This document shows positions 44,089-59,372 of a DNA stretch of 64,000 nt, in pieces; positions within the stretch are counted from its first letter, which is position 1, and each line of letters begins with the position of its first letter. The notes under the pieces are model-generated. The model had not been told where the DNA came from. It saw only the letters and a list, made by a program, of their open reading frames with translations, and did not search any database. The position numbers and the translations under genes are program-made. The stretch covers positions 142,639 to 206,638 of the IMG/VR virus record IMGVR_UViG_3300045973_000169; one strand, given 5' to 3'.

Positions 44089-45497
44089 TAGTACATTGTC
44101 TCCTGTTGTTCAGTCCAAGCTCCAATTGAAGGGAATGTTGCATGTGAGTTAAGATCAGCTCCACTACTTCCGAAGTTACTTGAGTAGTATCCTAATCTCC
44201 ATCTATAAGCAATAGTACGTGTTCCTTTAATCTCTATCTGTCTTCCTTCTTCATCAGTCATAACTCTATTATAACTGGACTCATTAACCCAAGGATAGTA
44301 ATCAGATACATCTAAGTTAGATCTACTTGTCTGAGGTCTATTAGGATCATAGATACCCTTAACAAATGTCTTAGATACATAAGGAGTATCTAGACCACCA
44401 GCTAATATAATAAGTTCATAGAACTTTAAGTTTTCATTAATATATCTATGGATACCAGAATTTAGATCCCTATCATATTGTTTATAGATCTTAAATCCTT
44501 CAAGGTCTTTACTCTCTGCACTAACATCTAATGGACCAGATGATAAGAACATATAAGCAGTCGTATATGCTACCCAGTTCTTAACTGCATTCCAGTATCT
44601 CTCTGGAGATGCTAATTTATTAGGTCGTAAATGTCTATCAACATTAGTTGAGAAGTCTACTATATTGTCTGCAATAACGAATGGATCAATAGTAGATAAA
44701 TATTCAGGATGGATATCAATGACATCAGCAAGACCACAATAGAATGGACTTAACTCTGATGTAAAACTAAATGTAGTACTAGGAGATACACTTCCATTTG
44801 TAGCTTCAACCCCATCTAGTGTAATCTCATACCTACAATTTAACTTTACTACATCTTCTAGTTTTCTATTAACCGAAAAACCAAACTGCATTAAACCATC
44901 AGGAAATACCCAATTATCAGTTAATGTATATAAAGATAAGTCAGGTGATGCATCGGTAACACCAACTACATTATATAATTTATGTAAAGAGAATGGTACT
45001 TTCCATTCGGTTATATAAATATCATTTACTAGATCAGCTTCTAATGTTGCTATTAGATTCCCAAATATATCTTTTATTTCTACAGGGATAGTTAATCCAA
45101 GTGCTAGTATGTCAGTTGAATCTACACGTAGAGCTAAATCTATTGTGTCTCCAATATCATAAACTGCTACTGTATTTATAATAGATCCTTCATCTAACTT
45201 TTGTCCATAGAATGAAGTCTTCGTTATCGCTGGTTGTCTAGGAGTTAGTATAAATCCAAATGGGTTAATAGTCCCATCAGCACTTTCAGTAACGATTTTA
45301 TGATACTTAGTTGGATCAGCTAATATAGATGCCCAAGTATATTTCCCTGCTAAGTCTACATATAGAGCAGATAGTAATGTAGTATCAACAGGTACAGCAT
45401 CCCATATTTTACCATCTACTGATTGATACCAGAGAACCATAAAGACTGGTTGCATATCAACCTGTGATGGTATTGAAAATAAAATTGTTTCACCCAT
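44088..45497 (-). CDS. Putative head-tail adaptor with N-terminal Ig-like extensions (469 aa)
   Basis: C-terminal adaptor-like region 'PFYCGLADV...SKDLEGFKI'; position before the closure protein. Confidence 0.5.
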   Translation of the reverse strand: MGETILFSIPSQVDMQPVFMVLWYQSVDGKIWDAVPVDTTLLSALYVDLAGKYTWASILADPTKYHKIVTESADGTINPFGFILTPRQPAITKTSFYGQKLDEGSIINTVAVYDIGDTIDLALRVDSTDILALGLTIPVEIKDIFGNLIATLEADLVNDIYITEWKVPFSLHKLYNVVGVTDASPDLSLYTLTDNWVFPDGLMQFGFSVNRKLEDVVKLNCRYEITLDGVEATNGSVSPSTTFSFTSELSPFYCGLADVIDIHPEYLSTIDPFVIADNIVDFSTNVDRHLRPNKLASPERYWNAVKNWVAYTTAYMFLSSGPLDVSAESKDLEGFKIYKQYDRDLNSGIHRYINENLKFYELIILAGGLDTPYVSKTFVKGIYDPNRPQTSRSNLDVSDYYPWVNESSYNRVMTDEEGRQIEIKGTRTIAYRWRLGYYSSNFGSSGADLNSHATFPSIGAWTEQQETMY

Positions 45498-45509: not shown

Positions 45510-47378
45510 TTATTCATATGATGCATTTATTGTTAGAGGATATTTGGTCCTATTGTTAATAAGTGGACTTGCCAGTTCAACTTTATCTATTTGAATACTT
45601 TGTTCTTTATTTTCACTCTTTAATGATACTTCTGATATTGTAACCATTAAAGTTTCAGTATTATTAGGAGTCACGAGACAGTTATTTATTAAACCTTGAG
45701 TTATTATTGACTCATTAAAATAATCAATAATTGCTATATCATTTGGATAAGGACTAAATTTAATTTCTTCTATTATGAATGGGAAGCTAACTGAAGCTCC
45801 ACCACAAACTGATCCACCAGACCCAATCAATATAAAATTGATTAACTCTACCCAAGATGGATTGCTTTCACCATTTACAACTGCTCCACCATCTGGATAA
45901 AAATCGGAGTTGAATGTAAAATCAGCATCACCATTTATTATAGCTCCATCTTCTGAAGAAACTATAAATAATGCAAGTGGAGTTATCTCTGATATACCAG
46001 AAATAATAGCTCCACCTAAAGTATCATTAACCGATTCAAAGCTAAACTGAGTTTCAGAACTTACTACTGATCCACCAACTGCTGACACTATAAAACTATT
46101 TAGAAAGTCCGCACTGCCAGAAACTATTGTCCCACCAGAAGCTGATATACTAAAAGTAGCATTTGGGATTATAGTTGCTGTACCACCAGTTATCGATCCA
46201 CCAATAAATAATGGATTAAACTCAGCCTTAATAGATCCATTACTTCCTACTGTAGATCCACCAGATACAGCAACTGTAAACATTTGAATCCCTGACATTG
46301 CAATAGTTGCATTGCCTGAAATTACAACTCCACCATTCGCAATGATTGATAGGTTCTTGTTAACAGATATTGTAGAACTACCAGATACTACGGCACCACC
46401 AATTGAGACCTCAGAGAAACCTTCAAGTTCTAATGAATCACCAGAGGCAACACATCCACCAGCTCCGACTAAGTTAAAATTCTTAGTAAAATTAACATTA
46501 GTTATACCACCAGTAATACTTCCACCTGAAGGTGTTACTGTAAAGTTATTTATTTTGGTAATTGATGCAGTTGCACCAATGACTGCTCCACCAGTTTGGA
46601 TTAAGGAAGTATTAAAGTTAGGGATTATATCATAAGAACTATTTGAGGAAATAGCTCCACCTACTGATATAACATTCTTTCCTGATATGATAGGAGAAGA
46701 TCCACCTAGTATTGCTCCATTTGCTGGAGTAATAGAAAGTGTCTTAGTAAAAGATATATCAGCAGAGCCACTACTTATAGCTCCAGATGTTGGAGTTACA
46801 TTCAGATTATGTGCAAAACTGATAGTAGGTGAACCACTAGATACAGATCCACCAGAAGATACAAGAGTTGTATTAAAGTTTGCTGCTAGAGTAGATAGAC
46901 CTCCAGTTAAGCATCCTCCGGTCCCAGTAATTGGGAATGTATAAGTATAAGCAAAAGTAGAGGTTCCGCTAGCAACTGCTCCTCTATCAGGTAAGAATAT
47001 AAAGTTAAGTGGAATTAAGATTGCTGCTTGACCACCTACTAAAGCTCCACCAGATGCTGTGAATGAGAAGTTTTGGTTAAACGTTATTGTAGCATTCCCA
47101 CCAATAGTTGTCCCACCAGTTGGAATTATTGTTGAATTATAATTTGGAGTAAAAGATGCACTGCCACTACAAACACTACCATTCGTAGAAGAAATTGATA
47201 TAGTTGAAGTCTGAGCAATAGTAGAGTTCCCACCAACGATAGAGCCACTATCCCCTATTATTGAGAACGTAGCATTACCAGTAATAATGGCGGACCCACC
47301 AAAGACAGATCCGCCATTTCCGTTGACAGTTAAATTACTACTAGTTGCTTGATTGGTTAATGCAAGCAGTAGTGACAT
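45510..47378 (-). CDS. Repeat protein with ~24 tandem 20-24 aa 'xxGG-x-(V/I)-x-G' units (622 aa)
   Basis: Counted by eye, e.g. PTGGTTIGGNATITFNQNFSFT / ASGGALVGGQAAILIPLNFIFL / SSGGSVSSGSPTISFAHNLNVT. Confidence 0.75.
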   Translation of the reverse strand: MSLLLALTNQATSSNLTVNGNGGSVFGGSAIITGNATFSIIGDSGSIVGGNSTIAQTSTISISSTNGSVCSGSASFTPNYNSTIIPTGGTTIGGNATITFNQNFSFTASGGALVGGQAAILIPLNFIFLPDRGAVASGTSTFAYTYTFPITGTGGCLTGGLSTLAANFNTTLVSSGGSVSSGSPTISFAHNLNVTPTSGAISSGSADISFTKTLSITPANGAILGGSSPIISGKNVISVGGAISSNSSYDIIPNFNTSLIQTGGAVIGATASITKINNFTVTPSGGSITGGITNVNFTKNFNLVGAGGCVASGDSLELEGFSEVSIGGAVVSGSSTISVNKNLSIIANGGVVISGNATIAMSGIQMFTVAVSGGSTVGSNGSIKAEFNPLFIGGSITGGTATIIPNATFSISASGGTIVSGSADFLNSFIVSAVGGSVVSSETQFSFESVNDTLGGAIISGISEITPLALFIVSSEDGAIINGDADFTFNSDFYPDGGAVVNGESNPSWVELINFILIGSGGSVCGGASVSFPFIIEEIKFSPYPNDIAIIDYFNESIITQGLINNCLVTPNNTETLMVTISEVSLKSENKEQSIQIDKVELASPLINNRTKYPLTINASYE

Positions 47379-47383
47379 TTATC

Positions 47384-48841
47384 TTATACCCACTTACCAT
47401 CGAAAGTAACTATATAAGTAATGAGTCCAGTTGTACCAGAAAAGATAGTACCGGCTAAAAATTTAGCTACTATTGCAATATATTCTCCAGGCATTACTGC
47501 AATTGGTACAGTGAAAGGCATATAGATAGTAGGGTTAGTTGCTCCAATAGCAGCAGTAGCAGCAAATGTATCCAGACCTAATGCTATACGTCTTGGAGCC
47601 TTAGTTGGTGTATTAATATTTTCAGTTGTTGCTAATGATAAAGCACTATGACCATATGCTAATGAATAAGCAATTACTCCTGGTCCGCCTGTTAAAGCTG
47701 CAGTAACCATTCCTTGTATTTTAACCCCAGATATTAATAAAACTTTCGCTGGGACTGTAGCCGTTGGTGTGGTATTTACGAATGAACATAAAATACCATC
47801 TGTCCCAGCGGCTAAAGTTGGCTGAATAGTAAACTGTCCACCTAAACCAGTATAAACTGAAGTTGTGTTTGTTAATACTGCTCCTGCCCCCAATACCATA
47901 CTGTTTGAAAAATAAGCTGTAGAACCTGTTGCCTGCCCAGTTTGTCCTTGAGTTAAACTTTTCCCTGCAATAGATGCTAACTCGTTTTGAGATAATCCTA
48001 ATCCAATAGAATCTTGACATCCGATACAAACATATCCTACTTTAATTATATTAGCTAATGAAGGGACTCCGTTATTATATGTTCTAATAGAGAATGGTTG
48101 TGTTCCAGCATTCATCGGCATACCAGCATCACCTGCTGAACTTATAGTAGCTACACATATCCCATTAATATAGTATAATACTCTATCATTTTCGCAAATA
48201 ATTTTATACTTATGCATTACTCCAGGAGCAGGTATAGTATAAGCTTGACCAGTCACATAGTGGGTAGGGGAAATAGTCATTGACTGTTCAGTCCCCTGAT
48301 TTGATAAAACTGCCTGTAGTGTTCCACCAGAAGTTGAATATCTAAAGAATGCCCCATCAGTTGGAGCAGTAGTTGAAATGCACTGGAAAAATCCAGCCTC
48401 TGTTACACAGTTAGCTTGATGTGTTTGTGTGTGTAACATTTCCCAAACAGCAAATGTTGATAAGTCACATAGGAAAGGGAAGAAAGCAACGGTAGTCATC
48501 CTAGCAACGTTAGTAGAAGCTGTAGCTAAACCAGCATTTAAGTTAATTGTATTTGTCCCTGCAACTATCGTCATAGTTCCTGTAGGCAATACCCAATCAT
48601 TTGAAAATGGTAATGATCCACTAAAAATTGAGTTTAAAAGAATAATAGGCGACCCTACTCCTAATCTTCCTTGAGCAGAGGTTCTAATATCATTAACTAT
48701 TCTTCCTACTGGATCTGTTGGTTCTGCTAATTCCCCAGACAGCATAGCATACCCAGCCTGAGTAGATACTGTTGGTAAATTAGTTTTTATATTATTATAA
48801 GTATCAAGATTAGTTCCTGTTACTAGTACGTCCATTGCCAT
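47384..48841 (-). CDS. Hypothetical virion protein with concanavalin A-like (lectin) domain (485 aa)
   Basis: 'DGAFFRY...MHKYKIICENDRVLYYINGICVATI' matches the H.Y.I......V.fyiDG pattern of ConA-like beta-sandwiches. Confidence 0.55.
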   Translation of the reverse strand: MAMDVLVTGTNLDTYNNIKTNLPTVSTQAGYAMLSGELAEPTDPVGRIVNDIRTSAQGRLGVGSPIILLNSIFSGSLPFSNDWVLPTGTMTIVAGTNTINLNAGLATASTNVARMTTVAFFPFLCDLSTFAVWEMLHTQTHQANCVTEAGFFQCISTTAPTDGAFFRYSTSGGTLQAVLSNQGTEQSMTISPTHYVTGQAYTIPAPGVMHKYKIICENDRVLYYINGICVATISSAGDAGMPMNAGTQPFSIRTYNNGVPSLANIIKVGYVCIGCQDSIGLGLSQNELASIAGKSLTQGQTGQATGSTAYFSNSMVLGAGAVLTNTTSVYTGLGGQFTIQPTLAAGTDGILCSFVNTTPTATVPAKVLLISGVKIQGMVTAALTGGPGVIAYSLAYGHSALSLATTENINTPTKAPRRIALGLDTFAATAAIGATNPTIYMPFTVPIAVMPGEYIAIVAKFLAGTIFSGTTGLITYIVTFDGKWV

Positions 48842-48853
48842 AAAAATCTCCCT

Positions 48854-49147
48854 TTAGTCAGCCCAAACCCAACGTAATGTAAACTGTCCAGTTAGTTTTT
48901 GAGATGATCTTGCATATATGGTAAAGCCATTCCCAGCAGTTGGTGTCCCACATGTAAGTCCACAGAATGCTGATAAGTATCTATGGTCATTAGCAGTATG
49001 ATCAACTGAAGTGTCATCAGCCATAATAAAAGCCTCAGCTTTACTTGTTGCTGAAATGGTTGCTTCTCCAGTAACAGTAACCTGGGCCTCATTTGACCCA
49101 GGCGCTGTACCAAAATTAATTGTTGTAGTCCCTTGTGATGATGCCAT
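48854..49147 (-). CDS. Small hypothetical virion protein (97 aa)
   Basis: Compact beta-rich ORF with RBS and 'DHTANDH' motif, closely spaced (12 nt) with the 485-aa gene. Confidence 0.65.
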   Translation of the reverse strand: MASSQGTTTINFGTAPGSNEAQVTVTGEATISATSKAEAFIMADDTSVDHTANDHRYLSAFCGLTCGTPTAGNGFTIYARSSQKLTGQFTLRWVWAD

Positions 49148-49156
49148 TAGTTATCC

Positions 49157-49603
49157 TTAAGCTGCTGGAACGCCCCAAGACATTTGGAACTTAGGAGTAA
49201 TCTTATATGTATCGCCGTTGTTAGCAGGAGTAAAAGGACCAGAAGCTTTCTCAGCCCAAATAAGAATCCCATCAGCATCAACTACATAATATCCATAGAT
49301 ATCTTTAGCGGTAGATGTAAGAGGCCCAGTAAATGTAAATGTCTGTTGTGCATACACTGCATCTGAAGGATCATTAGCTGGAGTAACTGTCCAAGAACCA
49401 GCAGTTAAAGTTATAGCTGCATATCCTGGGCCTGCTGCTTCTGCTGCATTATAAGCTGCTGCTGTATCTCCACCGTTTGGGTTAGGAGTAATATTAGTTG
49501 TATAAAGCTTTAATGTTAAGTTATTCCCACCAACAGGTTGTGATTTATTAAAGTAAGATTTTAGGATTTGATCTGCACCTAAATCAGATAGTACTAATGC
49601 CAT
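49157..49603 (-). CDS. Small beta-rich virion protein, family member D (148 aa)
   Basis: 'LKLYT...EAAGPGYAAITLT..SW...QTFTFTG...IYGYYV...GDTYKITP' is a widespread phage pattern; AGGAG RBS. Confidence 0.7.
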   Translation of the reverse strand: MALVLSDLGADQILKSYFNKSQPVGGNNLTLKLYTTNITPNPNGGDTAAAYNAAEAAGPGYAAITLTAGSWTVTPANDPSDAVYAQQTFTFTGPLTSTAKDIYGYYVVDADGILIWAEKASGPFTPANNGDTYKITPKFQMSWGVPAA

Positions 49604-49614
49604 TGTATTGCTCC

Positions 49615-50571
49615 TTATTTAGATACTGATAAAAGAAAAATCTTTAACGTATCATTGTTTATTTTATAATAAAAATTAATATCTCTCTTTTGGTCTAAGA
49701 TCATATCTATTCTTTTGATTTTAATCTTATCCATTAATTCTTGTGGAGATTTTATTGGTCTATTAAACTTAATTGTTATTGGATTATATTTAACGTTATT
49801 AAACGTTACATTATCTGGAATAGTTTTTACTATTCTCATTGGATTCTGTAATTGATCTAGTATATTCCCAGGGGGAACAGTTAAACTAGTTGACTCTGGA
49901 GTAAGTGTATTATATTTACTTGTTTCAAAAGTTGTCTTATATATAGAAGTAAGCCCACTCGCCTTAAATACATCAATAGAGATAGAGTCTCCAATATCAA
50001 AACTCCCGGAGAATGAGACTTTAAGTTCTCCAAGATCTACTTCTTGTAATTGTTGATATGTGAATTCTCCTACATAAATAGCGCCTTTAGTCACATCTAT
50101 TCTGTTTCCAGATAATATATCAATAACAAATGTATCGTTAGTGTTCCCAGTATATGAACTTACAATTTCTAATGTTCCACTAGCAGAAGCACTTCTTAAA
50201 TATATAGGTTCTGATACAGTTACAGATGATATAAACCTAGAAGTGTCATCTCCAGGAAAGATAGAGATATAATGTTGTCGTTCAGGGACTAATGATGAAG
50301 TTGGCTTAATAAATAATTGGTTACCATTAAGAGTATAATTAAATTGATATTGGATAAACTCATCTGGACTATTATCAAGACTATTTGAAGAAGTATCTAA
50401 TATAGCAAGATCTGGACCTGTCCATAAGCCTGTAGATATAGTATAAAGACTAATGCCATTCTTTACTGTGAATGGGTCTATTGGGCTATCAAACTCAATC
50501 AAAAAAGTTGAATCTAGTGGAAGGTTGATGCTTCCATCTACAGGTGTCATATTAAGTACAGAAAGACTCAT
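49615..50571 (-). CDS. Ig-like (Big_5/SbsA-type) domain protein (318 aa)
   Basis: Two 'V....P.dg..n.......i.i.F..pi' starts: 'VLNMTPVDGSINLPLDSTFLIEFDSPI' and 'IVKTIPDNVTFNNVKYNPITIKFNRPI'. Confidence 0.7.
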   Translation of the reverse strand: MSLSVLNMTPVDGSINLPLDSTFLIEFDSPIDPFTVKNGISLYTISTGLWTGPDLAILDTSSNSLDNSPDEFIQYQFNYTLNGNQLFIKPTSSLVPERQHYISIFPGDDTSRFISSVTVSEPIYLRSASASGTLEIVSSYTGNTNDTFVIDILSGNRIDVTKGAIYVGEFTYQQLQEVDLGELKVSFSGSFDIGDSISIDVFKASGLTSIYKTTFETSKYNTLTPESTSLTVPPGNILDQLQNPMRIVKTIPDNVTFNNVKYNPITIKFNRPIKSPQELMDKIKIKRIDMILDQKRDINFYYKINNDTLKIFLLSVSK

Positions 50572-50599
50572 GCCTTACCTCTTTATTTATTTATACTTC

Positions 50600-50613
50600 T
50601 TAGTGTTATTAAC
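50600..50613 (-). promoter_or_regulatory. GTTAATAACACTAA promoter-like motif just downstream of a terminator
   Basis: Intergenic copy identical over 14 nt to the copies at 60794-60807 and 62820-62833. Confidence 0.6.
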
Positions 50614-50629
50614 TAAAAATTCTAAGTAA

Positions 50630-50650
50630 GGGGAGAGAGTTACTCTCCCC
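50630..50650 (-). terminator. Probable terminator hairpin after the 151-aa gene
   Basis: 8-bp stem ggggagag/ctctcccc; weak U-tract (TTACTTAGAATTTTT) on the minus strand. Confidence 0.55.
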
Positions 50651-50658
50651 ATATTAGA

Positions 50659-51114
50659 TTAAGATGATAAAGGAATGGTTGCTAGAACAGTTGCTGCAGG
50701 GAAGGAAATTTTACCACCGCCGTTAGCTGTCTGTCCTGTCCCGCTATTAGCTGCAGACTGGTCATCAGTACTTAGAAGACTTGCTCCTACAATTGCATTA
50801 GCTGAGTTAACCCAAATACAGCAATACTTTGCTGTTAAAGCATTCGCTGATCCATCTTGAGTCCAAGCAACCTCTGCAGATGTTCTAATTTCTCTTGTAT
50901 TCCCATTTAGGGCCGATATAACAGGAACGGTCTTAGTAGCCCTTGTGTAACCATATTGTGTTGCTAACTCACCTTTAAATCCTGCTGCTGTAAAAGTATC
51001 AGAACCAGATGGTGCTGCTACTGATCCATCATGTAATGTAGCGAAGTAAAAATATGCTGCTGCTGATGTTGCTTGTAAATCTCTAAATCCTGTTGATGCT
51101 GTAAAATCTGCCAT
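50659..51114 (-). CDS. Small beta-rich virion protein, family member C (151 aa)
   Basis: 'GELATQYGYTRAT...VAWT...AKYCCIW...GGKISFPA' parallels 'E..G.GY...' and the C-terminus of 49157-49603. Confidence 0.7.
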   Translation of the reverse strand: MADFTASTGFRDLQATSAAAYFYFATLHDGSVAAPSGSDTFTAAGFKGELATQYGYTRATKTVPVISALNGNTREIRTSAEVAWTQDGSANALTAKYCCIWVNSANAIVGASLLSTDDQSAANSGTGQTANGGGKISFPAATVLATIPLSS

Positions 51115-51126
51115 TTGAATGACTCC

Positions 51127-51756
51127 TTATATTATGTTGCTAAATTTATATGGTTCTCCAGTTATCCTTCTTAAATCTAATGGTTTCCCATCTGGGGCCC
51201 TTATTGCATTTATTATTTTCATCCCCTCTAACGTTGGAGGACTTACTAGTCTAGGCGTAGATAGAACTGTTGATGGTAAAAATAAACCACTTACTTTACC
51301 TGTTACATCTAATGAAACTATTGTTTGTTGTGATCTTACTGTTGACGGAGATAAAGTTCCATTTACTAATGTTATTACACCATTTGTTCCAATTATTTTA
51401 ACTGCATTAACAGTTATTAATGATTGAATAGTAGATATATAAATTAGTCCATCTGAAATTATTACATTACCAGAAATATTAATCTGTTCAATGGTCTGTA
51501 AACTATCAACTGAAGAAATATTTAAGTATCCACTTTGTACTCCAGATACTTCTGCCTCAACTGTTATTAAGTTAGGAGCATATACAGCTCTATTATTCCC
51601 TAATACAGTAGGGATACTTAGGCTTGCACTATTAAGATCAATTGTATATTGTCTTGTTTGTAAAGGTTCTACATTTCCATCTTCATCAATAGAGAAAAAT
51701 TTAATCTCTGTGTCTTGAGTTAGAATTATAGGACCAGTATATAGGATAGTAGCCAT
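51127..51756 (-). CDS. Repeat protein beginning with the C-terminal half of an Fn3-associated/chitobiase-C-like domain (209 aa)
   Basis: Starts 'LYTGPIILTQDTEIKFFSIDEDGNVEPLQTRQYTI', followed by ~5 repeats related to those of 55622-58063. Confidence 0.7.
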   Translation of the reverse strand: MATILYTGPIILTQDTEIKFFSIDEDGNVEPLQTRQYTIDLNSASLSIPTVLGNNRAVYAPNLITVEAEVSGVQSGYLNISSVDSLQTIEQINISGNVIISDGLIYISTIQSLITVNAVKIIGTNGVITLVNGTLSPSTVRSQQTIVSLDVTGKVSGLFLPSTVLSTPRLVSPPTLEGMKIINAIRAPDGKPLDLRRITGEPYKFSNII

Positions 51757-51785
51757 TTATTCCCATCACTAGATAGTAAGATATT

Positions 51786-52178
51786 TTAGTTTACTGTTGC
51801 TACACTTATAGTAAATTCTGCTGGAGTATAATACGTTCCTGCAGACAAAGAAGTATTCCCTGTATCAATTAGCTTGATAACTCCATCTGTTGCTCCACCC
51901 ATTGTTTTTAATATAATTGTATTAGCGATACCGCTAATGTTACACAATATCTGTGTTCCAGCTAAAACTTTAATACTAGACCCAGAGGTCAACTGGAATG
52001 AAGCTGGCGTTACAGTTCTAGATGCTAGTACATTGGTGATCATACTAGCTTGCAAGACTCCATTGCCATCAATTGGCTGTGATATCATATTACAATAAAG
52101 AATTGTTGTAGTAGTATCTATAATATTTTGTAGCATTAAATCAATAACTGCTTTATTTATTGCTTTTGATGTTGCCAT
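51786..52178 (-). CDS. Small beta-rich virion protein, family member B (130 aa)
   Basis: Similar size and pattern to the adjacent 131-aa gene (L..I....T.I..C..QP; C-terminal P.F.I); AGGAG RBS. Confidence 0.7.
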   Translation of the reverse strand: MATSKAINKAVIDLMLQNIIDTTTTILYCNMISQPIDGNGVLQASMITNVLASRTVTPASFQLTSGSSIKVLAGTQILCNISGIANTIILKTMGGATDGVIKLIDTGNTSLSAGTYYTPAEFTISVATVN

Positions 52179-52193
52179 AGAAAAACTCCTTAA

Positions 52194-52589
52194 TTAGATC
52201 GGATCTGCTATTACTAAATTAAATGCTGGACTATCCCATATCTGTGAGGTCGTTACTGATTGTCCCGAAGGGAAGTTAACACTTGTCCCAGCTAGAATAT
52301 TAACTCCATCTGTAAGTACAACATAGGTAATAATCCCATTCCCTGATGGTGTATTCCCTGTTGTTGCATTAATTGTTAATGTAGCCTTATTTGAATTACC
52401 TGTATCATCAAATGGCCCAGTATAATTTGCAGAAGTTAAACCTGTCTTATTAATTAATACTCTTCCAGAGGTTGCTAAGTCTGCATAATTAGTTGGTTGT
52501 TGATTACAAAAAGCTATCCTTGTTGCTGAGTTCTTAATTACATTCAATGCTGGATAAAGCACTAATGCATGATTAATATATTTTGCCAT
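52194..52589 (-). CDS. Small beta-rich virion protein, family member A (131 aa)
   Basis: 'ALNVIKNSATRIAFCNQQPTNY...WDSPAFNLVIADP' is a widespread phage pattern; AAGGA RBS. Confidence 0.7.
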   Translation of the reverse strand: MAKYINHALVLYPALNVIKNSATRIAFCNQQPTNYADLATSGRVLINKTGLTSANYTGPFDDTGNSNKATLTINATTGNTPSGNGIITYVVLTDGVNILAGTSVNFPSGQSVTTSQIWDSPAFNLVIADPI

Positions 52590-52601
52590 AATATTTCCTT
52601 T

Positions 52602-55600
52602 TTATTGTAATGGTATTGCTATACTATCAATACTTACTCCAGTATCATAACCATCACCTGTAGAATATGCTGTAATTGTTACTAAACCATTTGTTACAGA
52701 AGATGGTGTTGTAAATGTATATACTCCAGAATATGAACATCCAAACCATGAAATACCATTCACATCGACTGATGCAATTACCGAATCAACTCCTTCATCA
52801 GTTACCGTATCAGCATATCCACCACTTACTGCTATTATGAAGTCTTGCCCTCCACTTATATTTAATGTCTTACTCATTGAGACACTTGTATAATTTCCCG
52901 TACTAAAATTACCTAATGGGAGTGGATTTCCACCTGCCCCTTCTAAAATAGTCCAACCAGCGCTCCCTAGATCTTGCCTTAATCCAGGAGGATAGATCTC
53001 GATTAAAGGTAGATCAGTAGTAATATTTAAATCTTCTATAAATAATGATCCACCCGTTAATACTGCAGAGACATCAGGAATAGATATATTAGTGTCTAAA
53101 TTGCCAAGAGTGAATATATTTGGATTAATTAGATTAATAGATTTTATATAAGTATCTATATTAAAACTGTCTATTTTAATAGGCATTTTAATTGGGACTG
53201 AGATATTATCTATTGTTAATTGGCTAACAGTCGTACTCGCACATATCTCAATTAAATGACTACCTGAAGAAATAGGACATGAGAAAGTTTGGTTTATATT
53301 CCTATTTAAATCAACTGGAGCATTATAGACAACTCCATCGACTCTTATAAATATTGGGAATGTATTTAAAGTCCAGTATCCCTTTAATAAAATAGAGATA
53401 TTCCCTTCCCCAGTTATTATTGTTTTAGATAACACTGCTCTCCAGTTAGAGAAACTATTATTTGCTACTAGTGAATATGTACCATTTATTGGAGTAGTAT
53501 TACTGACAGTCCACATATCAAAAGTACTTAAATAGTTTCTATTTGTCACCCAACCATCTAAAGTTCCACTTTCGAAGTTAGTTATAGTACATACATAAGA
53601 AGGATCTGTGTTGTCTAACTCTATCTGTGCATTCATATTATCAATAGTGATTATTCCGCCACCAAATCCTATAATAAAATCAATATCATTAGCCTCTACT
53701 ATAACTGAGTTAAAATCAAATTCTGCTTCAGTCATTGAAATATTAGCTAATAAATTATCGGCATTTATCCACCATAATGTAGCAGGAGTCATTGAGATAT
53801 TAAACAATATGTCTTTCACAGCTATAACTGGGAATCCAGCAGAGGTCATACTGATATTAAGTTTTACAGACTTAGCAGCAACAACATTTGGAGCGGATCC
53901 ATCAGTTGAATAATATATTGCAGATGGCTTATAAGTTGATAAAGTGACTGGTGTCCCTTGAGTGATAGTCATACTTGGGAGTGGGTAAGGATCAGTATGT
54001 AAATAGTTAATCGCCTTTCTTACTGCTGCCCCAGCATTAGCTAACCCATAAGTAAACCATTTTTTATCACCTGGGATACTTCCAGTCGTAGGTTTGTAAT
54101 TGACAGATGTATCTCCTGTTGAGAATATACAATCAAGTACTTGTGCATTTGTTAAACTTGGATTAGCTGACCAAACTAAAGCAGCGATAGCTGCTGCATT
54201 TGGAGATGCAAATGATGTTCCACTCCCACCAGTAGCAACATATCCTGTATAGAAGTTAGCATTTACTGTCCCGCTTTGCTTTGCAGCATAAGACATCTTT
54301 ACTTCCCACATTGACTGCGGTACTCTATCGTTCGGAATAATCATGGTATAGTCTTCAACATATCCGGTACATTTAATAGAGCGAGAAACTAAATTATCAG
54401 ATGGTTCACTCATTAATCTTACATACTTACTCCCGGCAGTGAATATAACGCTGAATGTTTTAGTAGTAACTAGCGCGGCATTATTTAATGGGGCGAGAGA
54501 CCAATGTGATTCTGATTCTGCTCCTATTAAAACATGTGAACCATAATTTGAGTTACCTACTAATACGCCATTTATTGTACTCCCAACCTGAACAGCATGA
54601 CGTCCTGCTAATATATTCATTAAATTTTTTTCATCATTACCAGATGCAACGAATCCAAGTTTGCCATTATTCCACATTTGATCCCAACATAATTCTAATG
54701 TTCTATCATAAAACTCAACTTCATTAAAATTATTCATATCTCCTAATGGATCACTATCATAGAAGAAAATATCAAATGTTGTTTTCCCACCAGAATATGT
54801 CGCAGAAGTAGCTAACCCATATACTGGTCTTAAAGGAGAGTTCGTATTTGTACATAAGACTCCCATATTAGTGAATGTAGCAATAGCCCCAACTATTTTA
54901 AACCTAGTTGAATATAATATATTTTCTTGCAATACAGGATATTTCTGTCCATAAATTACAGTACCAAAACTCATAGAGAGTATCTTAATAGATGGATTAG
55001 TTGAGGCTGCTACTAATGCCACTGTCCCAGCAATTGAATTCCCAAAATGACCATCTGTAGAATTAGCTTTTATAGGGAATAATGTACACCCACTTGCAAT
55101 GCCTTCGATAGGGTACCCATTTGCCACAATTGATGAACACATAGTCCCATGTTGTTCATTGTCTGTTAGCATCTCTTGATGGTTAGCGGTTCCCCATAAC
55201 CATGAAGGATACCCCCATGTAGAATGTATTTTACCAGCAAACCCTGGATGTAAAGCATCTATCCCAGAGTCAAATATCCCAATAAGTAAATTTGGGTCAC
55301 CTTTAGTTATGGTCCATGCTATATCAATTCCCATACGCTCATAGGCAGTTCTCTGTTGCATATTATATAATGGAGCATCAGATACTATCCCAATTGTACA
55401 ATTTTTATGAGGTAATACGAATCCAGCAAAGTTAACATGAGGAGAGTCATCAAGTTCATCCATGAATTCAAGAGAAGCATATTCGTCTATTTCAACGATA
55501 TAGATATCTAAGTTAGTCAATTTCTCTATTAACTTAGCTCCATGTTTTTCTAATATGAAATGGAATTCGCTAAGGTCATGACCAGGAGCCATGTGTATAT

Positions 55601-55631
55601 TCATTTGTCTAGTAGCCATAATTAAACCCAA
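52602..55631 (-). CDS. Subtilisin-family (S8) serine protease with prodomain and C-terminal repeat/jelly-roll modules (1009 aa; start may be 55619)
   Basis: Catalytic triad IFD121SG, QH161GT, GTS473FASP; oxyanion ASGN332; 'AAIAALVWSANPSLTNAQV'. Confidence 0.9.
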   Translation of the reverse strand: MGLIMATRQMNIHMAPGHDLSEFHFILEKHGAKLIEKLTNLDIYIVEIDEYASLEFMDELDDSPHVNFAGFVLPHKNCTIGIVSDAPLYNMQQRTAYERMGIDIAWTITKGDPNLLIGIFDSGIDALHPGFAGKIHSTWGYPSWLWGTANHQEMLTDNEQHGTMCSSIVANGYPIEGIASGCTLFPIKANSTDGHFGNSIAGTVALVAASTNPSIKILSMSFGTVIYGQKYPVLQENILYSTRFKIVGAIATFTNMGVLCTNTNSPLRPVYGLATSATYSGGKTTFDIFFYDSDPLGDMNNFNEVEFYDRTLELCWDQMWNNGKLGFVASGNDEKNLMNILAGRHAVQVGSTINGVLVGNSNYGSHVLIGAESESHWSLAPLNNAALVTTKTFSVIFTAGSKYVRLMSEPSDNLVSRSIKCTGYVEDYTMIIPNDRVPQSMWEVKMSYAAKQSGTVNANFYTGYVATGGSGTSFASPNAAAIAALVWSANPSLTNAQVLDCIFSTGDTSVNYKPTTGSIPGDKKWFTYGLANAGAAVRKAINYLHTDPYPLPSMTITQGTPVTLSTYKPSAIYYSTDGSAPNVVAAKSVKLNISMTSAGFPVIAVKDILFNISMTPATLWWINADNLLANISMTEAEFDFNSVIVEANDIDFIIGFGGGIITIDNMNAQIELDNTDPSYVCTITNFESGTLDGWVTNRNYLSTFDMWTVSNTTPINGTYSLVANNSFSNWRAVLSKTIITGEGNISILLKGYWTLNTFPIFIRVDGVVYNAPVDLNRNINQTFSCPISSGSHLIEICASTTVSQLTIDNISVPIKMPIKIDSFNIDTYIKSINLINPNIFTLGNLDTNISIPDVSAVLTGGSLFIEDLNITTDLPLIEIYPPGLRQDLGSAGWTILEGAGGNPLPLGNFSTGNYTSVSMSKTLNISGGQDFIIAVSGGYADTVTDEGVDSVIASVDVNGISWFGCSYSGVYTFTTPSSVTNGLVTITAYSTGDGYDTGVSIDSIAIPLQ

Positions 55632-58063
55632 TGTACCTGAGCAGATCCATAAATCTGGATAGTGTTACCATTGACTACAGGGAATGAAGCAACAGGGTCC
55701 CCAGTAATTGAAGCTCCCGAACCACCATAGCCACCATTTCCTTCCCATGCAGAAGAACCTTCTCCACCGCCACCGGTAACACCAGGGGTTACTAATGTTC
55801 CAGTAATAGGAGCGATGGTCCAACCTGTCCCACCAGCTCCATCAACAGGGCCAAAGCCGCCAGCTCCGCCGCCACCAGCAAATGCTATTGTTGTTCCATT
55901 AAGAGTCAGATAAGAATTTTCCCCTGCTGTACCCTCAGTGCTATCTGCCCCTGTCCCATCTCCGCCTGTTATATAGTCTATAACAACAGTTTTAGAACTA
56001 GTAAATGTATATGGTCCACTAGTTAGTATATAAGCAGTTGTAGTTAATGCTGTATCAGTTGCGCTCCATGGAGATGTCAATGTAAAGCCAGCCCCAGTAG
56101 CCCTTATCTTAAAGTGATACGTGGTAGATATGTCTAGTCCAGTAAACGTATGTCTTGTGGTTGCCTGTGAAGGTATATTTATAATTCCTAATTCATAACT
56201 AGTTGTCTTACCATACTCGATATCATAACCAGTAGCATAAGTAATTGCATCCCAGTTTAAGTCAATCTCAGTTGCTCTTGTTGCCATTTCTCCAGCGAAA
56301 CCAAGAGTAGGGGCAGATAATGTTCCTCTAGTTAAAACATTAAATGTCTTAGGAGACCCATTAACTAAGGCTCCACATGTTACTGTAGTTAAGTTGCTTG
56401 TTGATGATAGACCTCTACATTTTAAAGTATCTCCATTTGCTATTGTTTTATTTCCACTAGCACTTGTAACCCAAGGGCCACCAGAGATCGATATTTGTGA
56501 TTGTGTTAAATAGGCACCTACATTAATGCTTGTATTTAAACCACTGATAGTTACTGTATTAGATTCAACATATGAGTTCTGTAATGCATCAGTGATATCT
56601 GAGAATACTATTGCATCAGGTGCATTGTCTTTACTGCCAGTATTAACTTTAGTTATATTCCAAGTATCACTTACTCCATTAATGGTTAATGTGAATGTAC
56701 GTGCTCCGACTGTTGTTTCAGAACAACTAAATTCTACTTGGTCACCAGCATTTAATGTTAAATTAGTAGATGGGTTGAGTAAGTTACTTGGGATACCGCC
56801 ATTTACATAGACAAAGCCTTGAGCATTATTAGCTAGTCCAGTCCTTGTAACGACTCCAGTTACAGTAGTGTCAATCCCAGTAATTAAAACTTTATTTGAA
56901 TGTACATCATCTGCATACCAAGCATTAGCTATATCAGTAAATGAGAATGCATTAGGAACTATATCTGCCATACCAGATACTATAATATCGAATTGTCCAA
57001 CAGTTATAGCACTATTATAAGAAGACGGGCTCAATAGTCCATTAGTAACTGATGTAATCGTAGGAGCAAATACGCCTCTTAAGGTTGGTGTCACTGAAGA
57101 AATAGACATTAGTCCAGAACAGAAACCTACTAAAGAAGGAGCATTAATAGTTCTAGTTACATTACCATAAGTAATACTTAGTGGTCCGTTAGTTACGGAT
57201 GGACCATAAGCTGCAATGTTTATTTGAGTTACTGCTTGTAAACTATTAACAGAAGATATATTTAATACTCCTGACATTACGCCTACAATAGAAGGAGCGA
57301 ATATACTTCTTATGCCTCCTACTGAAGAAATACCAAATAATCCATTATCAACTCCAGGGATATGACCAACAATCTTAGAGGCATAAATAGATGATGTATA
57401 TGTTACCCGAGATAAACTTAATAGCCCAGAACATTTACCTAAAATAGATGGAGCATTAATTGTATAGGGAGAATTTAAGGCAGATAAACTTAATAGTCCA
57501 TTTATTTTTTCAATTACTAGATCAGTACAATCCCAAACAATAGCCCAGTCAGGCCATCCAAGGTCTAACAATGCCTGTATCGCATTACGTGTAGTATCAT
57601 TAGGAAGAGTTCCATTTGAACTTTTACCTCTTACCCAAACACGTTCCCCAAGGTTAGCTCTCTGTTCTGCTGTAAGAGGATTGTTTATTACAACTGTTAG
57701 GTTACCATTAGAATCAGGAGCATTGCCATTTACAGACTTAACTACGCCTATTACTTGGCTAGCATTATGAATATGAGTAGAGGGAGTAAATGTTGTTGGT
57801 TTACCTTGGACAGATGCCCAATCAGTATTAACTGTAATCCCTTGTGTAGTATTGTTAATATCCATTATATCGGATATAGAATGTTTGTGGAATGAAGGTG
57901 GGAAGAAAGTAGGGACCTCTGCTATATTAGACCATTTAACATTTGAGGTTGCTAAAGTAATAGTGGTCTGGTCTGGCGTAAAGTCAGGTGCAGTCTTCTG
58001 TAATATCACTTGTAATTCTTGTAAAGTTGATAGTCCTGTTGGAACCCTATAAGACTTAGCCAT
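55622..58063 (-). CDS. Fibre-like repeat protein with HxH motifs, ~7 tandem repeats, Ig-like and fibronectin type III domains, Gly-rich end (813 aa from the revised start)
   Basis: Start moved from 58096 to 58063 (GGAGG RBS before MAKSYR). Two 'W....xxPT.F.PS.HxH' units, 'VKSVNGNAPDSNGN', and FN3 'IDLNWDAITYATGYDIEY...TYHFKIRA'. Confidence 0.75.
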   Translation of the reverse strand: MAKSYRVPTGLSTLQELQVILQKTAPDFTPDQTTITLATSNVKWSNIAEVPTFFPPSFHKHSISDIMDINNTTQGITVNTDWASVQGKPTTFTPSTHIHNASQVIGVVKSVNGNAPDSNGNLTVVINNPLTAEQRANLGERVWVRGKSSNGTLPNDTTRNAIQALLDLGWPDWAIVWDCTDLVIEKINGLLSLSALNSPYTINAPSILGKCSGLLSLSRVTYTSSIYASKIVGHIPGVDNGLFGISSVGGIRSIFAPSIVGVMSGVLNISSVNSLQAVTQINIAAYGPSVTNGPLSITYGNVTRTINAPSLVGFCSGLMSISSVTPTLRGVFAPTITSVTNGLLSPSSYNSAITVGQFDIIVSGMADIVPNAFSFTDIANAWYADDVHSNKVLITGIDTTVTGVVTRTGLANNAQGFVYVNGGIPSNLLNPSTNLTLNAGDQVEFSCSETTVGARTFTLTINGVSDTWNITKVNTGSKDNAPDAIVFSDITDALQNSYVESNTVTISGLNTSINVGAYLTQSQISISGGPWVTSASGNKTIANGDTLKCRGLSSTSNLTTVTCGALVNGSPKTFNVLTRGTLSAPTLGFAGEMATRATEIDLNWDAITYATGYDIEYGKTTSYELGIINIPSQATTRHTFTGLDISTTYHFKIRATGAGFTLTSPWSATDTALTTTAYILTSGPYTFTSSKTVVIDYITGGDGTGADSTEGTAGENSYLTLNGTTIAFAGGGGAGGFGPVDGAGGTGWTIAPITGTLVTPGVTGGGGEGSSAWEGNGGYGGSGASITGDPVASFPVVNGNTIQIYGSAQVHWV

Positions 58064-58098
58064 TAAAAATCCTCCAAACTTCATATACAGATACACCT

Positions 58099-58107
58099 GT
58101 TAATAAC
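58099..58107 (-). promoter_or_regulatory. GTTATTAAC(A) promoter-like motif downstream of the capsid terminator
   Basis: Lies in the gap between the terminator (58116-58146) and the next RBS. Confidence 0.55.
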
Positions 58108-58115
58108 TCTTTAAC

Positions 58116-58146: not shown

Positions 58147-58175
58147 CTATTACATTATAGTATTTAAAATATTTC

Positions 58176-59372
58176 TTATACCATTTTGTCGCTAACGGTA
58201 AGATCTTCTGACCACTTAACATCAGCAGCCTGTGCATTAACGTTTGTAACACCGAATTCAGCGAAACGGTTAGGTACAACTTTAACATTTTTCACGACAC
58301 CAACTCCACGACCCTCGTTCAGGATTGCAATACCATACTTCTCACGAAGCTTGATATTCTGGATATCACGCTCTGGATCACTCCATTGATGCTGATTAAT
58401 TTCTTCAGCTTGAACGATAGCTCCTGCATTACCTGAGTCTACAAAGTAGATAGAGGTTAATTTATTGACCGGATCAAACGGAACCTGTGGGGAAACCATC
58501 ACGCGGAATGGAATCTGTGCCCAAGCAGGAAGAACCGGAGTACCTTTAAAGTCGACAGGTGAAGTTTCACCAGGACGTGCACCTTTTCCAGCCATACCTT
58601 GACCTTCGAAGAAGGAATCACGGGAAACACCTTGAACGTCATATCCACCAATAAGTGGTCCGCCGCCATGTCTCCATGCGAATACTTTTAAGAACGGGTC
58701 TTTTGCCCAGATTGCCCAAGACAGAGGATGCATAACAATCGTGTCAGGAGCATAACCTTCTACAAGCATCGAAGCATAGATATCGAAGAAGTCTTCTGAT
58801 CCAAAGCTGTAGTTAAGTGCCCCAGTACCATCTTTACCAGACAGAGGACGTCCAATAACCGAAGCTGCTGGATTCTTGTTGTCTGCTAAAGTCAGACCCT
58901 GTTTTTCGAATAAACGGAAACAGATGTGATTTTTTCTACGAGCAAAAGCTTTACCAGCAGCTTTCAGCCATAGTGCGATAACGTCATACTGAGACTGATC
59001 AATCATTTCTTCAGTAAGGGAGAGTTTGATACCGTATTTACGGATGTCAACACGGATAACAGATCCTCCACCCATTGTGATTTCTTCAGTTCCGTATTCA
59101 GCACCAGGAGCGATCTCATCGATCATTTCCATTGCGCCTTCAGCAGGAAGAGTAATATAAATACCCTCTTTCTGAGAAATTTTTGTAAATAGTTGGTTTG
59201 CGATCAGAAGAGGTTCAGAAGCTTGACGAACGACCTCACTAATTGCGATTGGCAGATACTTAGAAAGATCACCATGATTTAAGATGTCTCTAAGTTTTAG
59301 ACTTTCTTTATTAGCATCAGTAAGCTTTAGCTCCTGACCAATTGCTAATAGTTGTTTTTCTAATTCACTCAT
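58176..59372 (-). CDS. Major capsid protein (HK97 fold, 398 aa)
   Basis: 'ISEVVRQASEP', 'EIAPGAEY', 'IRKYGIKLSLTEEMIDQSQYDVI...AAGKAFAR', 'IKLREKYGIAILN'; strong GGAGG RBS, terminator downstream. Confidence 0.9.
   Translation of the reverse strand: MSELEKQLLAIGQELKLTDANKESLKLRDILNHGDLSKYLPIAISEVVRQASEPLLIANQLFTKISQKEGIYITLPAEGAMEMIDEIAPGAEYGTEEITMGGGSVIRVDIRKYGIKLSLTEEMIDQSQYDVIALWLKAAGKAFARRKNHICFRLFEKQGLTLADNKNPAASVIGRPLSGKDGTGALNYSFGSEDFFDIYASMLVEGYAPDTIVMHPLSWAIWAKDPFLKVFAWRHGGGPLIGGYDVQGVSRDSFFEGQGMAGKGARPGETSPVDFKGTPVLPAWAQIPFRVMVSPQVPFDPVNKLTSIYFVDSGNAGAIVQAEEINQHQWSDPERDIQNIKLREKYGIAILNEGRGVGVVKNVKVVPNRFAEFGVTNVNAQAADVKWSEDLTVSDKMV

What the first reader, a model, noticed from the sequence alone, without database searches (positions are those of the whole stretch)
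45510..58063. 12.5 kb accessory cassette pairing small 130-150 aa proteins with tandem-repeat proteins: possible bead-on-string appendages
Seen between capsid and neck genes: four small beta-rich proteins (52194, 51786, 50659, 49157) interleaved with three kinds of ~19-28 aa repeat arrays (24 GG units in the 622-aa protein; 7 and ~5 related units in the 813- and 209-aa proteins; NISMT-type units in the protease). These chains end in lectin, FN3, Ig or protease domains. Known analogy, not shown homology: bead-chain neck fibres of Anabaena myophage A-1(L). Inference: each repeat templates a ring of a cognate small subunit, so repeat number sets fibre length and the tip displays a binding or enzymatic domain.
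Basis: inference. Interest (0 to 1): 0.62.

Follow-up and report, generated by a model that had tools for sequence, protein, structure and literature searches.

The report
Beads-on-a-rope fibre genes in jumbo phage
A 12.5 kb optional gene block in a 207 kb phage most likely encodes fibres built like those recently solved in phages GP4, Bas63 and A1002, in which small "bead" proteins clasp a repeat-bearing "rope" protein. Here one phage carries several bead and rope types, and one rope has 24 repeat units.

Summary
The window is the last 64 kb of a 206.6 kb phage record. An all-minus-strand block lies between the capsid gene and the neck/sheath genes. It holds four small proteins (131, 130, 151, 148 aa) and four repeat-bearing proteins:
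- g622: exactly 24 units of 22 aa.
- g813: 7 units.
- g209: about 5 related units.
- The S8 protease g1009: 3 units of 19 aa.

Relatives of this phage lack everything in the block except the Ig-like g318, so the block is accessory.

- The model of g148 has the fold of the Bas63/Sf14 whisker (Z 9.8 and 9.6) and of GP4 fibre I gp80 (Z 7.6). In solved virions these proteins form dimers strung on a rope protein.
- g148 relatives sit next to a "GG" repeat protein in 17 of 19 informative phage contigs. Such repeats were absent from 181 kb of control loci.
- g131 and g130 are paralogues, with weaker links to the same superfamily.
- g151 and g97 remain unassigned.

Binding itself is not shown. The complex prediction gave no verdict, and g622 alone folded with low confidence.

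Verdict: a new variant of a known kind, of moderate interest.

The parts
55622..58063 (-). g813, a multi-domain fibre protein. The N-terminus is tail-fibre-like. Seven rope-like units of 24-28 aa span residues ~180-370 (window ~56954-57526). Two weak Ig-like stretches follow, then FN3 (residues 594-667, window 56063-56284) and a Gly-rich tail.
   Evidence: PHROG tail-protein hits on residues 33-131. fn3 1.3e-7. Big_3 is weak. Unit positions are and periodicity.
52602..55631 (-). g1009, a subtilisin-like protease (S8, residues 114-506). It is followed by three 19-aa 'NISMT' units (residues ~578-640, window ~53712-53900) and an unassigned C-terminal part of about 350 aa.
   Evidence: Peptidase_S8 6.8e-23. 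Lag-19 tandem z 7.6. CBM_4_9 reaches only E 0.064. A relative contig keeps the order S8(1035 aa)-129-133-CHB_HEX_C protein.
52194..52589 (-). g131, a candidate bead protein and founder of a family of 153 representative clusters of proteins of about 120-135 aa.
   Evidence: Exhaustive search. Atlas feature score 0.96 to clusters carrying PF23140 Gp80. 2 of 104 relatives hit PF23140 and 9 of 104 hit phrog_240. Profile comparison with the g148 family is weak and collinear: E 6.9e-4, probability 27%.
51786..52178 (-). g130, a paralogue of g131 and a candidate second bead.
   Evidence: hhalign against the g131-family profile: probability 90.4%, E 1.4e-6 over 82 columns. No other relatives by word search.
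51127..51756 (-). g209, a short candidate rope: a partial CHB_HEX_C/Fn3_assoc-like N-terminus followed by about five units related to those of g813.
   Evidence: blastp against g813 1.8e-11. Pfam hits lie just under the cut-off. Units. Lag 30 and lag 24 have z 3.6 and 3.3.
50659..51114 (-). g151, a small protein of unassigned fold. It counts as bead-like by size and position only.
   Evidence: One relative at 42% identity. No profile link to either bead family.
49615..50571 (-). g318, an Ig-like (Big_5) protein and the only member of the block conserved in related phages. It is a candidate collar or capsid decoration.
   Evidence: Big_5 9.8e-10. Homologues follow the capsid gene in L004 (43% identity, after three small ORFs) and directly in L005 (38%).
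49157..49603 (-). g148, a bead protein with the whisker / GP4 fibre I fold.
   Evidence: AF2 model: pLDDT 82.8. Bas63 9mt4_K: Z 9.8, rmsd 2.4 over 105 aa. Sf14 9c39_K: Z 9.6. GP4 8jou_a: Z 7.6. 4 of 23 relatives hit PF23140. Atlas structure TM 0.82 to a Gp80 cluster.
48854..49147 (-). g97, a small protein of unknown role that travels with g148 and g485.
   Evidence: A homologue sits in the same position in L008. No family hits.
47384..48841 (-). g485, an unknown protein lying between the bead and rope genes.
   Evidence: Homologue only in L008. Proteins in this slot in other loci are unrelated. No Pfam or PHROG hit.
45510..47378 (-). g622, a candidate rope: 24 'GG' units of 22 aa (residues 20-540, window 45759-47321) plus an 82-aa C-terminal part.
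   Evidence: Unit HMM. Lag 22 z 11.1. It is the only such protein among the genome's 444 ORFs. GG-repeat proteins lie downstream of g148-type genes in 17 of 19 loci. Alone it folds with pLDDT 42.
58176..59372 (-). Major capsid protein, the upstream boundary of the block.
   Evidence: Phage_capsid_4 1.2e-12; phrog_3922.
44088..45497 (-). g469, a conserved structural gene and the downstream boundary. It is followed by g145, g243 and the tail sheath (40346-42856).
   Evidence: Homologue in L004 at 5.2e-68. Virion-structural and sheath PHROG hits for the following genes.

Best explanation
The block is an accessory fibre cassette of a jumbo contractile-tailed phage. It encodes at least one, and probably two or three, 'chain-like' fibres of the kind solved in podophages GP4 and A1002 and in the collar whiskers of myophages Bas63 and Sf14.

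In that architecture, a small protein with an incomplete beta-sandwich forms dimers. An extended 'rope' polypeptide threads through the dimers and supplies the missing strands, giving beads on a string.

Proposed roles here:
- g148 is a bead.
- g622 is its rope. Each 22-aa GG unit would be the docking site for about one dimer, so 24 units would give a fibre of roughly 60-70 nm carrying up to about 48 copies of g148.
- g131 and g130 are a second, paralogous bead pair. They would dock on the shorter arrays in g1009 (3 units), g209 (~5) and g813 (7). The fibre would then carry a subtilisin-like protease and FN3/Ig-like domains.
- g318 (Ig-like) may be the collar or capsid anchor.

Shown: the ORFs, the repeats, the fold of g148, the g130-g131 relationship, the gene linkage and the accessory status.
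Inferred: binding, stoichiometry, which bead pairs with which rope, and where the fibre attaches.
For: 1. Fold. Among 48,161 PDB representatives, the only match to the g148 model with Z >= 8 is the Sf14 whisker (Z 9.6). GP4 fibre I is next (Z 7.6). The top seven are all phage or archaeal-virus tail, neck or fibre chains, and rank 50 has Z 2.4. The Bas63 whisker scores Z 9.8 with rmsd 2.4 A over 105 of 107 residues. The model has the N-terminal helix (residues 7-19) described for whisker dimerisation (PMC12609058).
2. Family. 4 of 23 g148 relatives hit PF23140 Gp80, best 3.2e-6. Atlas neighbours carry Gp80.
3. Linkage. Nineteen g148-family loci (37-71% identity) have at least 1.3 kb of downstream DNA. 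Fifteen of them have a same-strand protein with a chain of 3 or more GG units within 2.6 kb. Two more have degenerate or variant arrays. Such chains occur in 0 of 389 ORFs of 181 kb of unrelated phage loci and in 1 of 444 ORFs of the own genome. The genes lying between bead and rope are not conserved, so the pair itself is what is kept.
4. Unit number varies from 3 to 24, and the arrays are fused to different globular domains.
5. Rope length per dimer in solved systems fits a 22-aa unit. A1002 has about 24-30 aa per dimer. The Bas63 rope domain is shorter than about 50 aa and holds two dimers.
6. In GP4 the gene next to bead gp80 encodes a Gly-rich protein with 20-aa periodicity, z 6.1.
7. g622 alone gives no confident fold: pLDDT 42.3, with no residue at 70 or above.
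8. Second module. g130 is a paralogue of g131. Both bead families touch phrog_240. g131-family genes directly follow large fibre- or enzyme-like proteins. Some of these carry 23-aa tandem units: L037 z 8.4, L042 z 4.8.
Against: - No direct evidence of binding. The one complex job gave no verdict.
- g148 itself does not reach PF23140 even at E 10. Neither the g148-family profile nor g622 finds solved beads or ropes by sequence.
- The GG-unit HMM does not match GP4 gp79. gp79 is not in the PDB by sequence, so its role as the GP4 rope is unverified.
- A 22-residue Gly-rich repeat is also typical of self-folding beta-solenoids, and a single-sequence AF2 run cannot exclude one.
- Links of g131/g130 to the bead fold are weak (probability 27%; 2 of 104 Pfam hits). 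g151 has no link.
- Several large proteins upstream of g131-type genes show no detectable repeats.
Confidence: 0.6

Rival explanations
1. The GG-repeat protein g622, and the g813/g209 arrays, fold on their own as beta-solenoid or beta-helical fibre shafts. The small proteins are separate accessory subunits, for example short whiskers, baseplate 'garland' dimers or caps. They would bind elsewhere or only at one end.
For: A 22-residue Gly-rich period is typical of parallel beta-helices (general knowledge). The weak PDB sequence hits of g622 are to beta-helical spike proteins, E 0.6-0.8. The AF2 model of g622 is made of many short strands. In phage 7-7-1 a protein of similar fold (9rkv_A, entry 'Agrobacterium phage 7-7-1 tail fibers', Z 6.7) may be one of the garland dimers that bind the tail fibres; no rope is mentioned in that paper.
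Against: No Beta_helix or other Pfam hit for g622. AF2 gives no confident solenoid: pLDDT 42, pTM 0.36. The tight bead-repeat gene linkage across divergent phages, with variable unit number, is what a docking array predicts.
Confidence: 0.2
2. The small proteins are capsid decoration (head) proteins or fibre-assembly chaperones, and the repeat proteins are ordinary head or tail fibres. The adjacency reflects only a shared late structural operon.
For: The block lies directly after the capsid gene. Some relatives of both small-protein families hit phrog_240, annotated 'head protein'.
Against: The fold match is to neck and fibre beads, not to known decoration folds. Close relatives of this phage have the same capsid gene without these proteins. 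The bead-GG pair occurs in many different genomic contexts.
Confidence: 0.1
3. An A-1(L)-type bead chain. The small proteins form trimers that polymerise head to tail by themselves, capped by a larger tip protein, with no template.
For: A-1(L) shows that rope-less bead chains exist: about 14 gp81 trimers between gp82 and gp80 (PMC10966104).
Against: g148 matches the dimeric, rope-bound beads. This model leaves the conserved linkage to repeat proteins unexplained.
Confidence: 0.05

Closest known systems
Collar-whisker complex of Felixounavirus myophages Bas63 and Sf14 (PDB 9mt4, 9c39; PMC12609058)
   Same: Best structural match of g148 (Z 9.8 and 9.6). A contractile-tailed phage. The beads are dimers strung 'like beads on a string' on a rope, and an Ig-like protein belongs to the system. 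Here the block contains the Ig-like g318.
   Different: In Bas63 the rope is a short N-terminal extension of the collar protein and holds only two dimers of one bead type. Here the candidate ropes are separate proteins with 3 to 24 units, there are at least two bead families, and g318 has no N-terminal extension. No sequence similarity is detectable.
Fibre I of Ralstonia podophage GP4 (gp80 dimers on a separate rope protein; PDB 8jou; Pfam PF23140)
   Same: A separately encoded rope. The fold match is Z 7.6. Relatives of g148 hit PF23140. The gene order is bead first, then a Gly-rich periodic protein (gp80-gp79 in GP4, g148...g622 here).
   Different: GP4 is a podophage with five dimers per fibre. 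g148 itself does not reach the Pfam threshold. The identity of the GP4 rope gene could not be verified here.
Chain-like tail fibres of Pseudomonas podophage A1002 (gp40/gp41 dimers on the nozzle-rope protein gp39; PMC13730344)
   Same: Two different bead proteins of about 150 aa are encoded next to a 620-aa rope protein. Eleven dimers dock by beta-sheet augmentation, and the rope ends in an Ig-like domain. This parallels g131/g130 and the multi-domain repeat proteins.
   Different: In A1002 the rope is part of the tail nozzle of a podophage. Here the host phage has a sheath, the block sits between the capsid and neck genes, and one repeat-bearing protein carries a protease.
Bead-chain neck fibre of Anabaena myophage A-1(L) (gp82-gp81-gp80; PMC10966104)
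   Same: A beaded, flexible fibre on a myophage, with a larger distal tip domain.
   Different: Its beads are trimers joined head to tail, with no template protein and no repeat array. This is an analogy of appearance only.

Membership tests
Chain-like (bead-on-rope) phage fibres: GP4 fibre I, Bas63/Sf14 whiskers, A1002 fibres | A small bead protein with the whisker/Gp80 fold (N-terminal helix plus incomplete beta-sandwich) | tested here: met
   g148: Z 9.8 (9mt4_K), 9.6 (9c39_K), 7.6 (8jou_a). It is the best match in an exhaustive scan of 48,161 chains. For g131 and g130 there are only weak links. For g151 there are none.
Chain-like (bead-on-rope) phage fibres | An extended rope protein or domain with successive docking sites for bead dimers | tested here: inconclusive
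   Repeat arrays are present and genetically linked to the bead genes. g622 alone gives no confident fold. The complex job gave no verdict. There is no sequence similarity to solved ropes.
Chain-like (bead-on-rope) phage fibres | Beads act as dimers that clasp the rope by beta-strand completion | not testable with these tools
   This needs a multimer structure or biochemistry. Only the N-terminal helix used for dimerisation in Bas63 is seen in the g148 model.
Chain-like (bead-on-rope) phage fibres | An Ig-like collar or adaptor that anchors the rope to the neck or tail | tested here: inconclusive
   g318 has a Big_5 Ig-like domain and lies inside the block. However, it is conserved in relatives that lack beads and ropes, and it has no PDB relative by sequence.
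Pfam PF23140 (Gp80) | The sequence scores above the family threshold | tested here: not met
   None of g148, g131, g130, g151 or g97 hits at E up to 10. 4 of 23 g148 relatives and 2 of 104 g131 relatives do hit. This indicates kinship at the fold or superfamily level only.
A-1(L)-type bead-chain neck fibre | Trimeric beads polymerising head to tail without a template, anchored by a gp82N-like domain to a pentadecameric neck protein | not testable with these tools
   gp81 and gp80 of A-1(L) were not modelled in the virion map (gp81 only fitted as AlphaFold models into a 6.07-A map of the recombinant fibre), so no solved gp81 or gp80 chain was available to compare. The g148 fold points to the dimeric class instead.
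Self-folding right-handed beta-solenoid | A confident stacked-coil fold of the repeat region on its own | tested here: inconclusive
   Single-sequence AF2 gives pLDDT 42.3 and pTM 0.36. No Beta_helix Pfam hit. A single-sequence model cannot exclude this fold.

The most novel reading that the evidence does not exclude
The 22-aa GG unit is a sequence-readable ruler in which one unit binds one bead dimer. Fibre length could then be read from genomes across a widespread, previously unrecognised bead-plus-GG-rope gene pair. This jumbo phage carries the longest array seen here (24 units, about 65 nm). It also carries two or three further bead/rope sets that mount a subtilisin protease and FN3/Ig domains on beaded fibres, making a modular, multi-fibre accessory armament between the head and neck genes.
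Probability: 0.3. Interest if true: 0.7.

Novelty: new variant of a known kind. Interest (0 to 1): 0.55.

Why it matters
Bead-on-rope fibres have been seen only in a handful of cryo-EM structures (2023-2026), and their ropes have no recognised sequence family. This work adds three things.

- **A genomic signature.** A Gp80/whisker-fold gene followed by a Gly-Gly repeat gene with a period of about 22 aa would let such fibres, and their likely length, be predicted from sequence in uncultured phages.
- **A wider range of phages.** The architecture would extend to a jumbo myophage.
- **Modular use.** The same docking principle may be reused to mount different enzymatic or binding domains. That is relevant to host recognition, to penetration of capsule or biofilm, and to engineering modular phage fibres.

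Tried and rejected
- **Complex prediction.** g148 x4 with g622 residues 150-219 scored 0.12 against a mark of 0.32. That is no verdict, and I do not use it as evidence either way.
- **Sequence searches against solved structures.** g148, g622, the g148-family profile and g318 found nothing relevant.
- **Cultured-phage collection.** Megablast of the block and tblastn of g148 found no match.
- **Word-based protein search.** It found one or no relatives for g131, g151 and g130. That tool sees only proteins of 0.55 to 1.75 times the query length, so fusions would be missed.
- **Pattern scans of viral contigs.** g131 and g151 found nothing. The g131-family alignments were too divergent for the locus finder.
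- **Profile comparisons.** Single-sequence comparisons of g131, g130, g151 and g97 with the g148 family gave no signal. GP4 gp80 against either bead family was not significant.
- **GP4 rope.** The GG-unit HMM does not match GP4 gp79, and gp79 is not in the PDB. The GP4 fibre paper is not held.
- **A wrong guess.** I guessed accession LC064302 for an A1002 relative. It turned out to be an unrelated phage, KPP21.
- **Genes between bead and rope.** I tested the idea that they form one family and rejected it.
- **Not needed.** No other genetic code was required, and the reads tools were not used.

Full report
**Context**

The window is the last 64 kb of a 206,638-base virus record that CheckV rates complete. 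GC content is about 0.28-0.41. All genes of the region lie on the minus strand. In the direction of transcription they are:

- a 394-aa ORF
- the major capsid protein (58176-59372; Phage_capsid_4 1.2e-12)
- g813, g1009, g131, g130, g209, g151, g318, g148, g97, g485, g622
- g469, g145 and g243 (the latter two with virion-structural PHROG hits)
- a tail sheath (40346-42856; phrog_16991)

**Check of the observation**

- A profile built from the g622 repeat finds exactly 24 units of about 22 aa between residues 20 and 540. The consensus is close to SGGSVVGGSATIAKNLNFSII. Self-similarity peaks at lag 22, z 11.1 against shuffles.
- g813 has seven units of 24-28 aa (residues ~180-370). g209 has about five. 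The two arrays are related (blastp 1.8e-11).
- g1009 has three 19-aa 'NISMT' units directly after its S8 protease domain (z 7.6).
- FN3 (g813), Big_5 (g318) and Peptidase_S8 (g1009) are confirmed. A lectin is not. The best hint is CBM_4_9 at E 0.064.

**The block is accessory**

Contigs whose capsid protein is 75% and 68% identical (L004, L005) carry the g318 homologue after the capsid gene. In L005 it follows directly; in L004 it follows three small unrelated ORFs. L004 then continues with the g469, g145, g243 and sheath homologues. None of the small proteins or repeat proteins is present. A third relative, L002 (89% identical capsid protein), carries different cargo after the capsid gene. 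A short ENA contig from a closer relative keeps the order S8 protease-129 aa-133 aa-CHB_HEX_C protein.

**What the small proteins are**

Pfam and PHROGs leave the small proteins open. Their only hit is phrog_10467 (unknown function) for g148. The ESM Atlas placed g148 and g131 next to clusters carrying PF23140, 'Podophage GP4 fiber I protein gp80'.

For g148:

- I collected 24 relatives from viral contigs (37-71% identity), aligned them (A1) and folded g148 (pLDDT 82.8).
- Foldseek's best matches are the Sf14 and Bas63 neck entries, the 7-7-1 tail-fibre entry and GP4 fibre I.
- VIA-align gives Z 9.8 (Bas63 9mt4_K, rmsd 2.4 A over 105 of 107 residues), Z 9.6 (Sf14) and Z 7.6 (GP4 8jou_a).
- A Foldseek-independent scan of 48,161 chains returns the Sf14 whisker as the only hit with Z >= 8. 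GP4 comes second. The top seven are all phage or archaeal-virus tail, neck or fibre chains, and rank 50 has Z 2.4.
- Four of the 23 relatives hit PF23140, best 3.2e-6.

For the other small proteins:

- The exhaustive search found 153 representative clusters for g131, almost all 120-135 aa.
- g130 matches that family profile (probability 90.4%, E 1.4e-6), so g131 and g130 are paralogues.
- The g131 family aligns collinearly but weakly with the g148 family (E 6.9e-4, probability 27%).
- 2 of 104 g131-family members hit PF23140. Both families touch phrog_240.
- g151 and g97 have no detectable link to either family.

**What the literature says these folds do**

[quoted passage not shown] The rope completes the incomplete whisker sandwiches (PMC12609058).
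- GP4: five gp80 dimers sit on a separately encoded rope that interlocks with an Ig-like collar.
- A1002: eleven dimers of two different ~150-aa proteins dock by beta-augmentation on the fibre-dock domain of a 620-aa nozzle-rope protein that ends in an Ig-like domain (PMC13730344).
About 14 gp81 trimers join head to tail between gp82 and gp80 without a template (PMC10966104).

The subunits in that mechanism are clasping dimers, not rings.

**Is g622 a rope?**

- *Gene linkage.* Nineteen g148-family loci have at least 1.3 kb of downstream DNA. In 15 of them a protein with a chain of three or more GG units at 17-27 aa spacing lies on the same strand within 2.6 kb. L008 has a degenerate GG protein with a g622-like N-terminus, in the same g148-g97-g485-rope order as here. 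L031 has about 17 units of a variant motif. That makes 17 of 19.
- *Background.* The same detector finds no such chain in 389 ORFs from 181 kb of unrelated phage loci. In the own genome it finds only g622 among 444 ORFs.
- *Diversity of the arrays.* The linked proteins range from 154 to 1,501 aa, and the detector counts 3-9 units in them. Some are fused to LamG-like or DUF2341/BNR domains.
- *The pair is what is conserved.* The genes between bead and rope are unrelated among loci. These loci share ancestry, so the count is not a count of independent events.
- *Unit length.* The rope length used per dimer in solved systems (about 24-30 aa in A1002; less than about 50 aa for two dimers in Bas63) agrees with one 22-aa unit per dimer. 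This is inference.
- *GP4.* In GP4 (MH638294) the gene next to gp80 encodes gp79, a 325-aa Gly-rich virion-associated protein with 20- and 10-aa periodicity (z 6.1 and 5.1). gp79 is not in the PDB by sequence, and the GG profile does not match it. That parallel therefore remains a lead.
- *g622 alone.* Folded alone it gave pLDDT 42.3 and pTM 0.36, with no residue at 70 or above. There is no confident solenoid, but this single-sequence result is weak evidence.

**The first half of the block**

g131-family genes elsewhere directly follow large fibre- or enzyme-like proteins, as g131 follows g1009 here.

- In L037 the two upstream proteins carry four and two 23-aa units (z 8.4 for the second).
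- L042 has a 1,050-aa protein with 23-aa units (z 4.8).
- Other upstream proteins show no detectable tandem array.

This fits short docking arrays embedded in cargo-bearing proteins, but it is much weaker than the g148-g622 case. Which of g813, g1009 and g209 pairs with g131 and g130, and what g151 does, remains open.

**Verdict**

- Best reading (confidence about 0.6): an accessory cassette for bead-on-rope fibres of the GP4/Bas63/A1002 kind.
- Assignments: g148 plus g622 is the best-supported pair. g131 and g130 with the shorter arrays are a plausible second set. g318 is a possible Ig-like anchor.
- Main rival (about 0.2): the repeats are self-folding beta-solenoid shafts and the beads bind elsewhere.
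- What is new: a myophage of jumbo size, several bead families in one block, a 24-unit rope, arrays in a protease-bearing protein, and a recurrent bead-plus-GG-repeat gene pair that current family libraries do not name.

That makes it a new variant of a known kind, of moderate interest. 

Noticed in passing
L002, L004, L005 (downstream of the capsid gene); window 58064-58175: The slot just after the capsid gene is a cargo hotspot in this phage clade. L004 has three small unrelated ORFs (85, 112 and 153 aa). L005 has none. L002 has a 105-aa ORF plus a >355-aa protein that looks like a beta-helix.
   Followed up: partly
L031:9187-10344: A different rope-like array lies two genes after a g148-type bead gene: about 17 units with the motif GxGQFxYSGxA. 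This suggests several rope repeat types for one bead family.
   Followed up: no
L035 (Ralstonia phage GP4, MH638294) 32948-33925: gp79, encoded next to the solved bead gp80, is Gly-rich with 20- and 10-aa periodicity (z 6.1 and 5.1). It is annotated as virion-associated but is absent from the PDB by sequence. It is a candidate for the GP4 rope.
   Followed up: partly
L010:3978-5891; L013:6509-9061: GG-repeat proteins fused to LamG-like (by eye) or DUF2341 plus BNR/sortilin-like domains. The ropes can therefore carry different globular cargo.
   Followed up: partly
window 44088-45497: g469 has about 110 extra N-terminal residues compared with its 351-aa homologue in L004.
   Followed up: no
window 55625-56062 and 57523-58063: g813 ends in a Gly-rich low-complexity tail. 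It begins with two HxH-containing motifs and has PHROG tail-protein hits, like the N-termini of trimeric tail fibres.
   Followed up: no
model of window 49157-49603: The bead fold also resembles domains inside large baseplate or tail proteins (HFTV1 9h4p_BD, Klebsiella phage KP1 9f4a, T4 5iv5_BJ, phi812 arm, Bxb1 tail tip; Z 5.6-7.3). This hints at a wider superfamily of fibre-clasping modules.
   Followed up: no
L008:8001-13237: In L008 the full g148-g97-g485-rope set lies directly upstream of a 478-aa protein that by eye resembles a ClpP/SppA-type prohead protease and a 254-aa ORF. The module therefore sits in the head region in another phage lineage as well.
   Followed up: no
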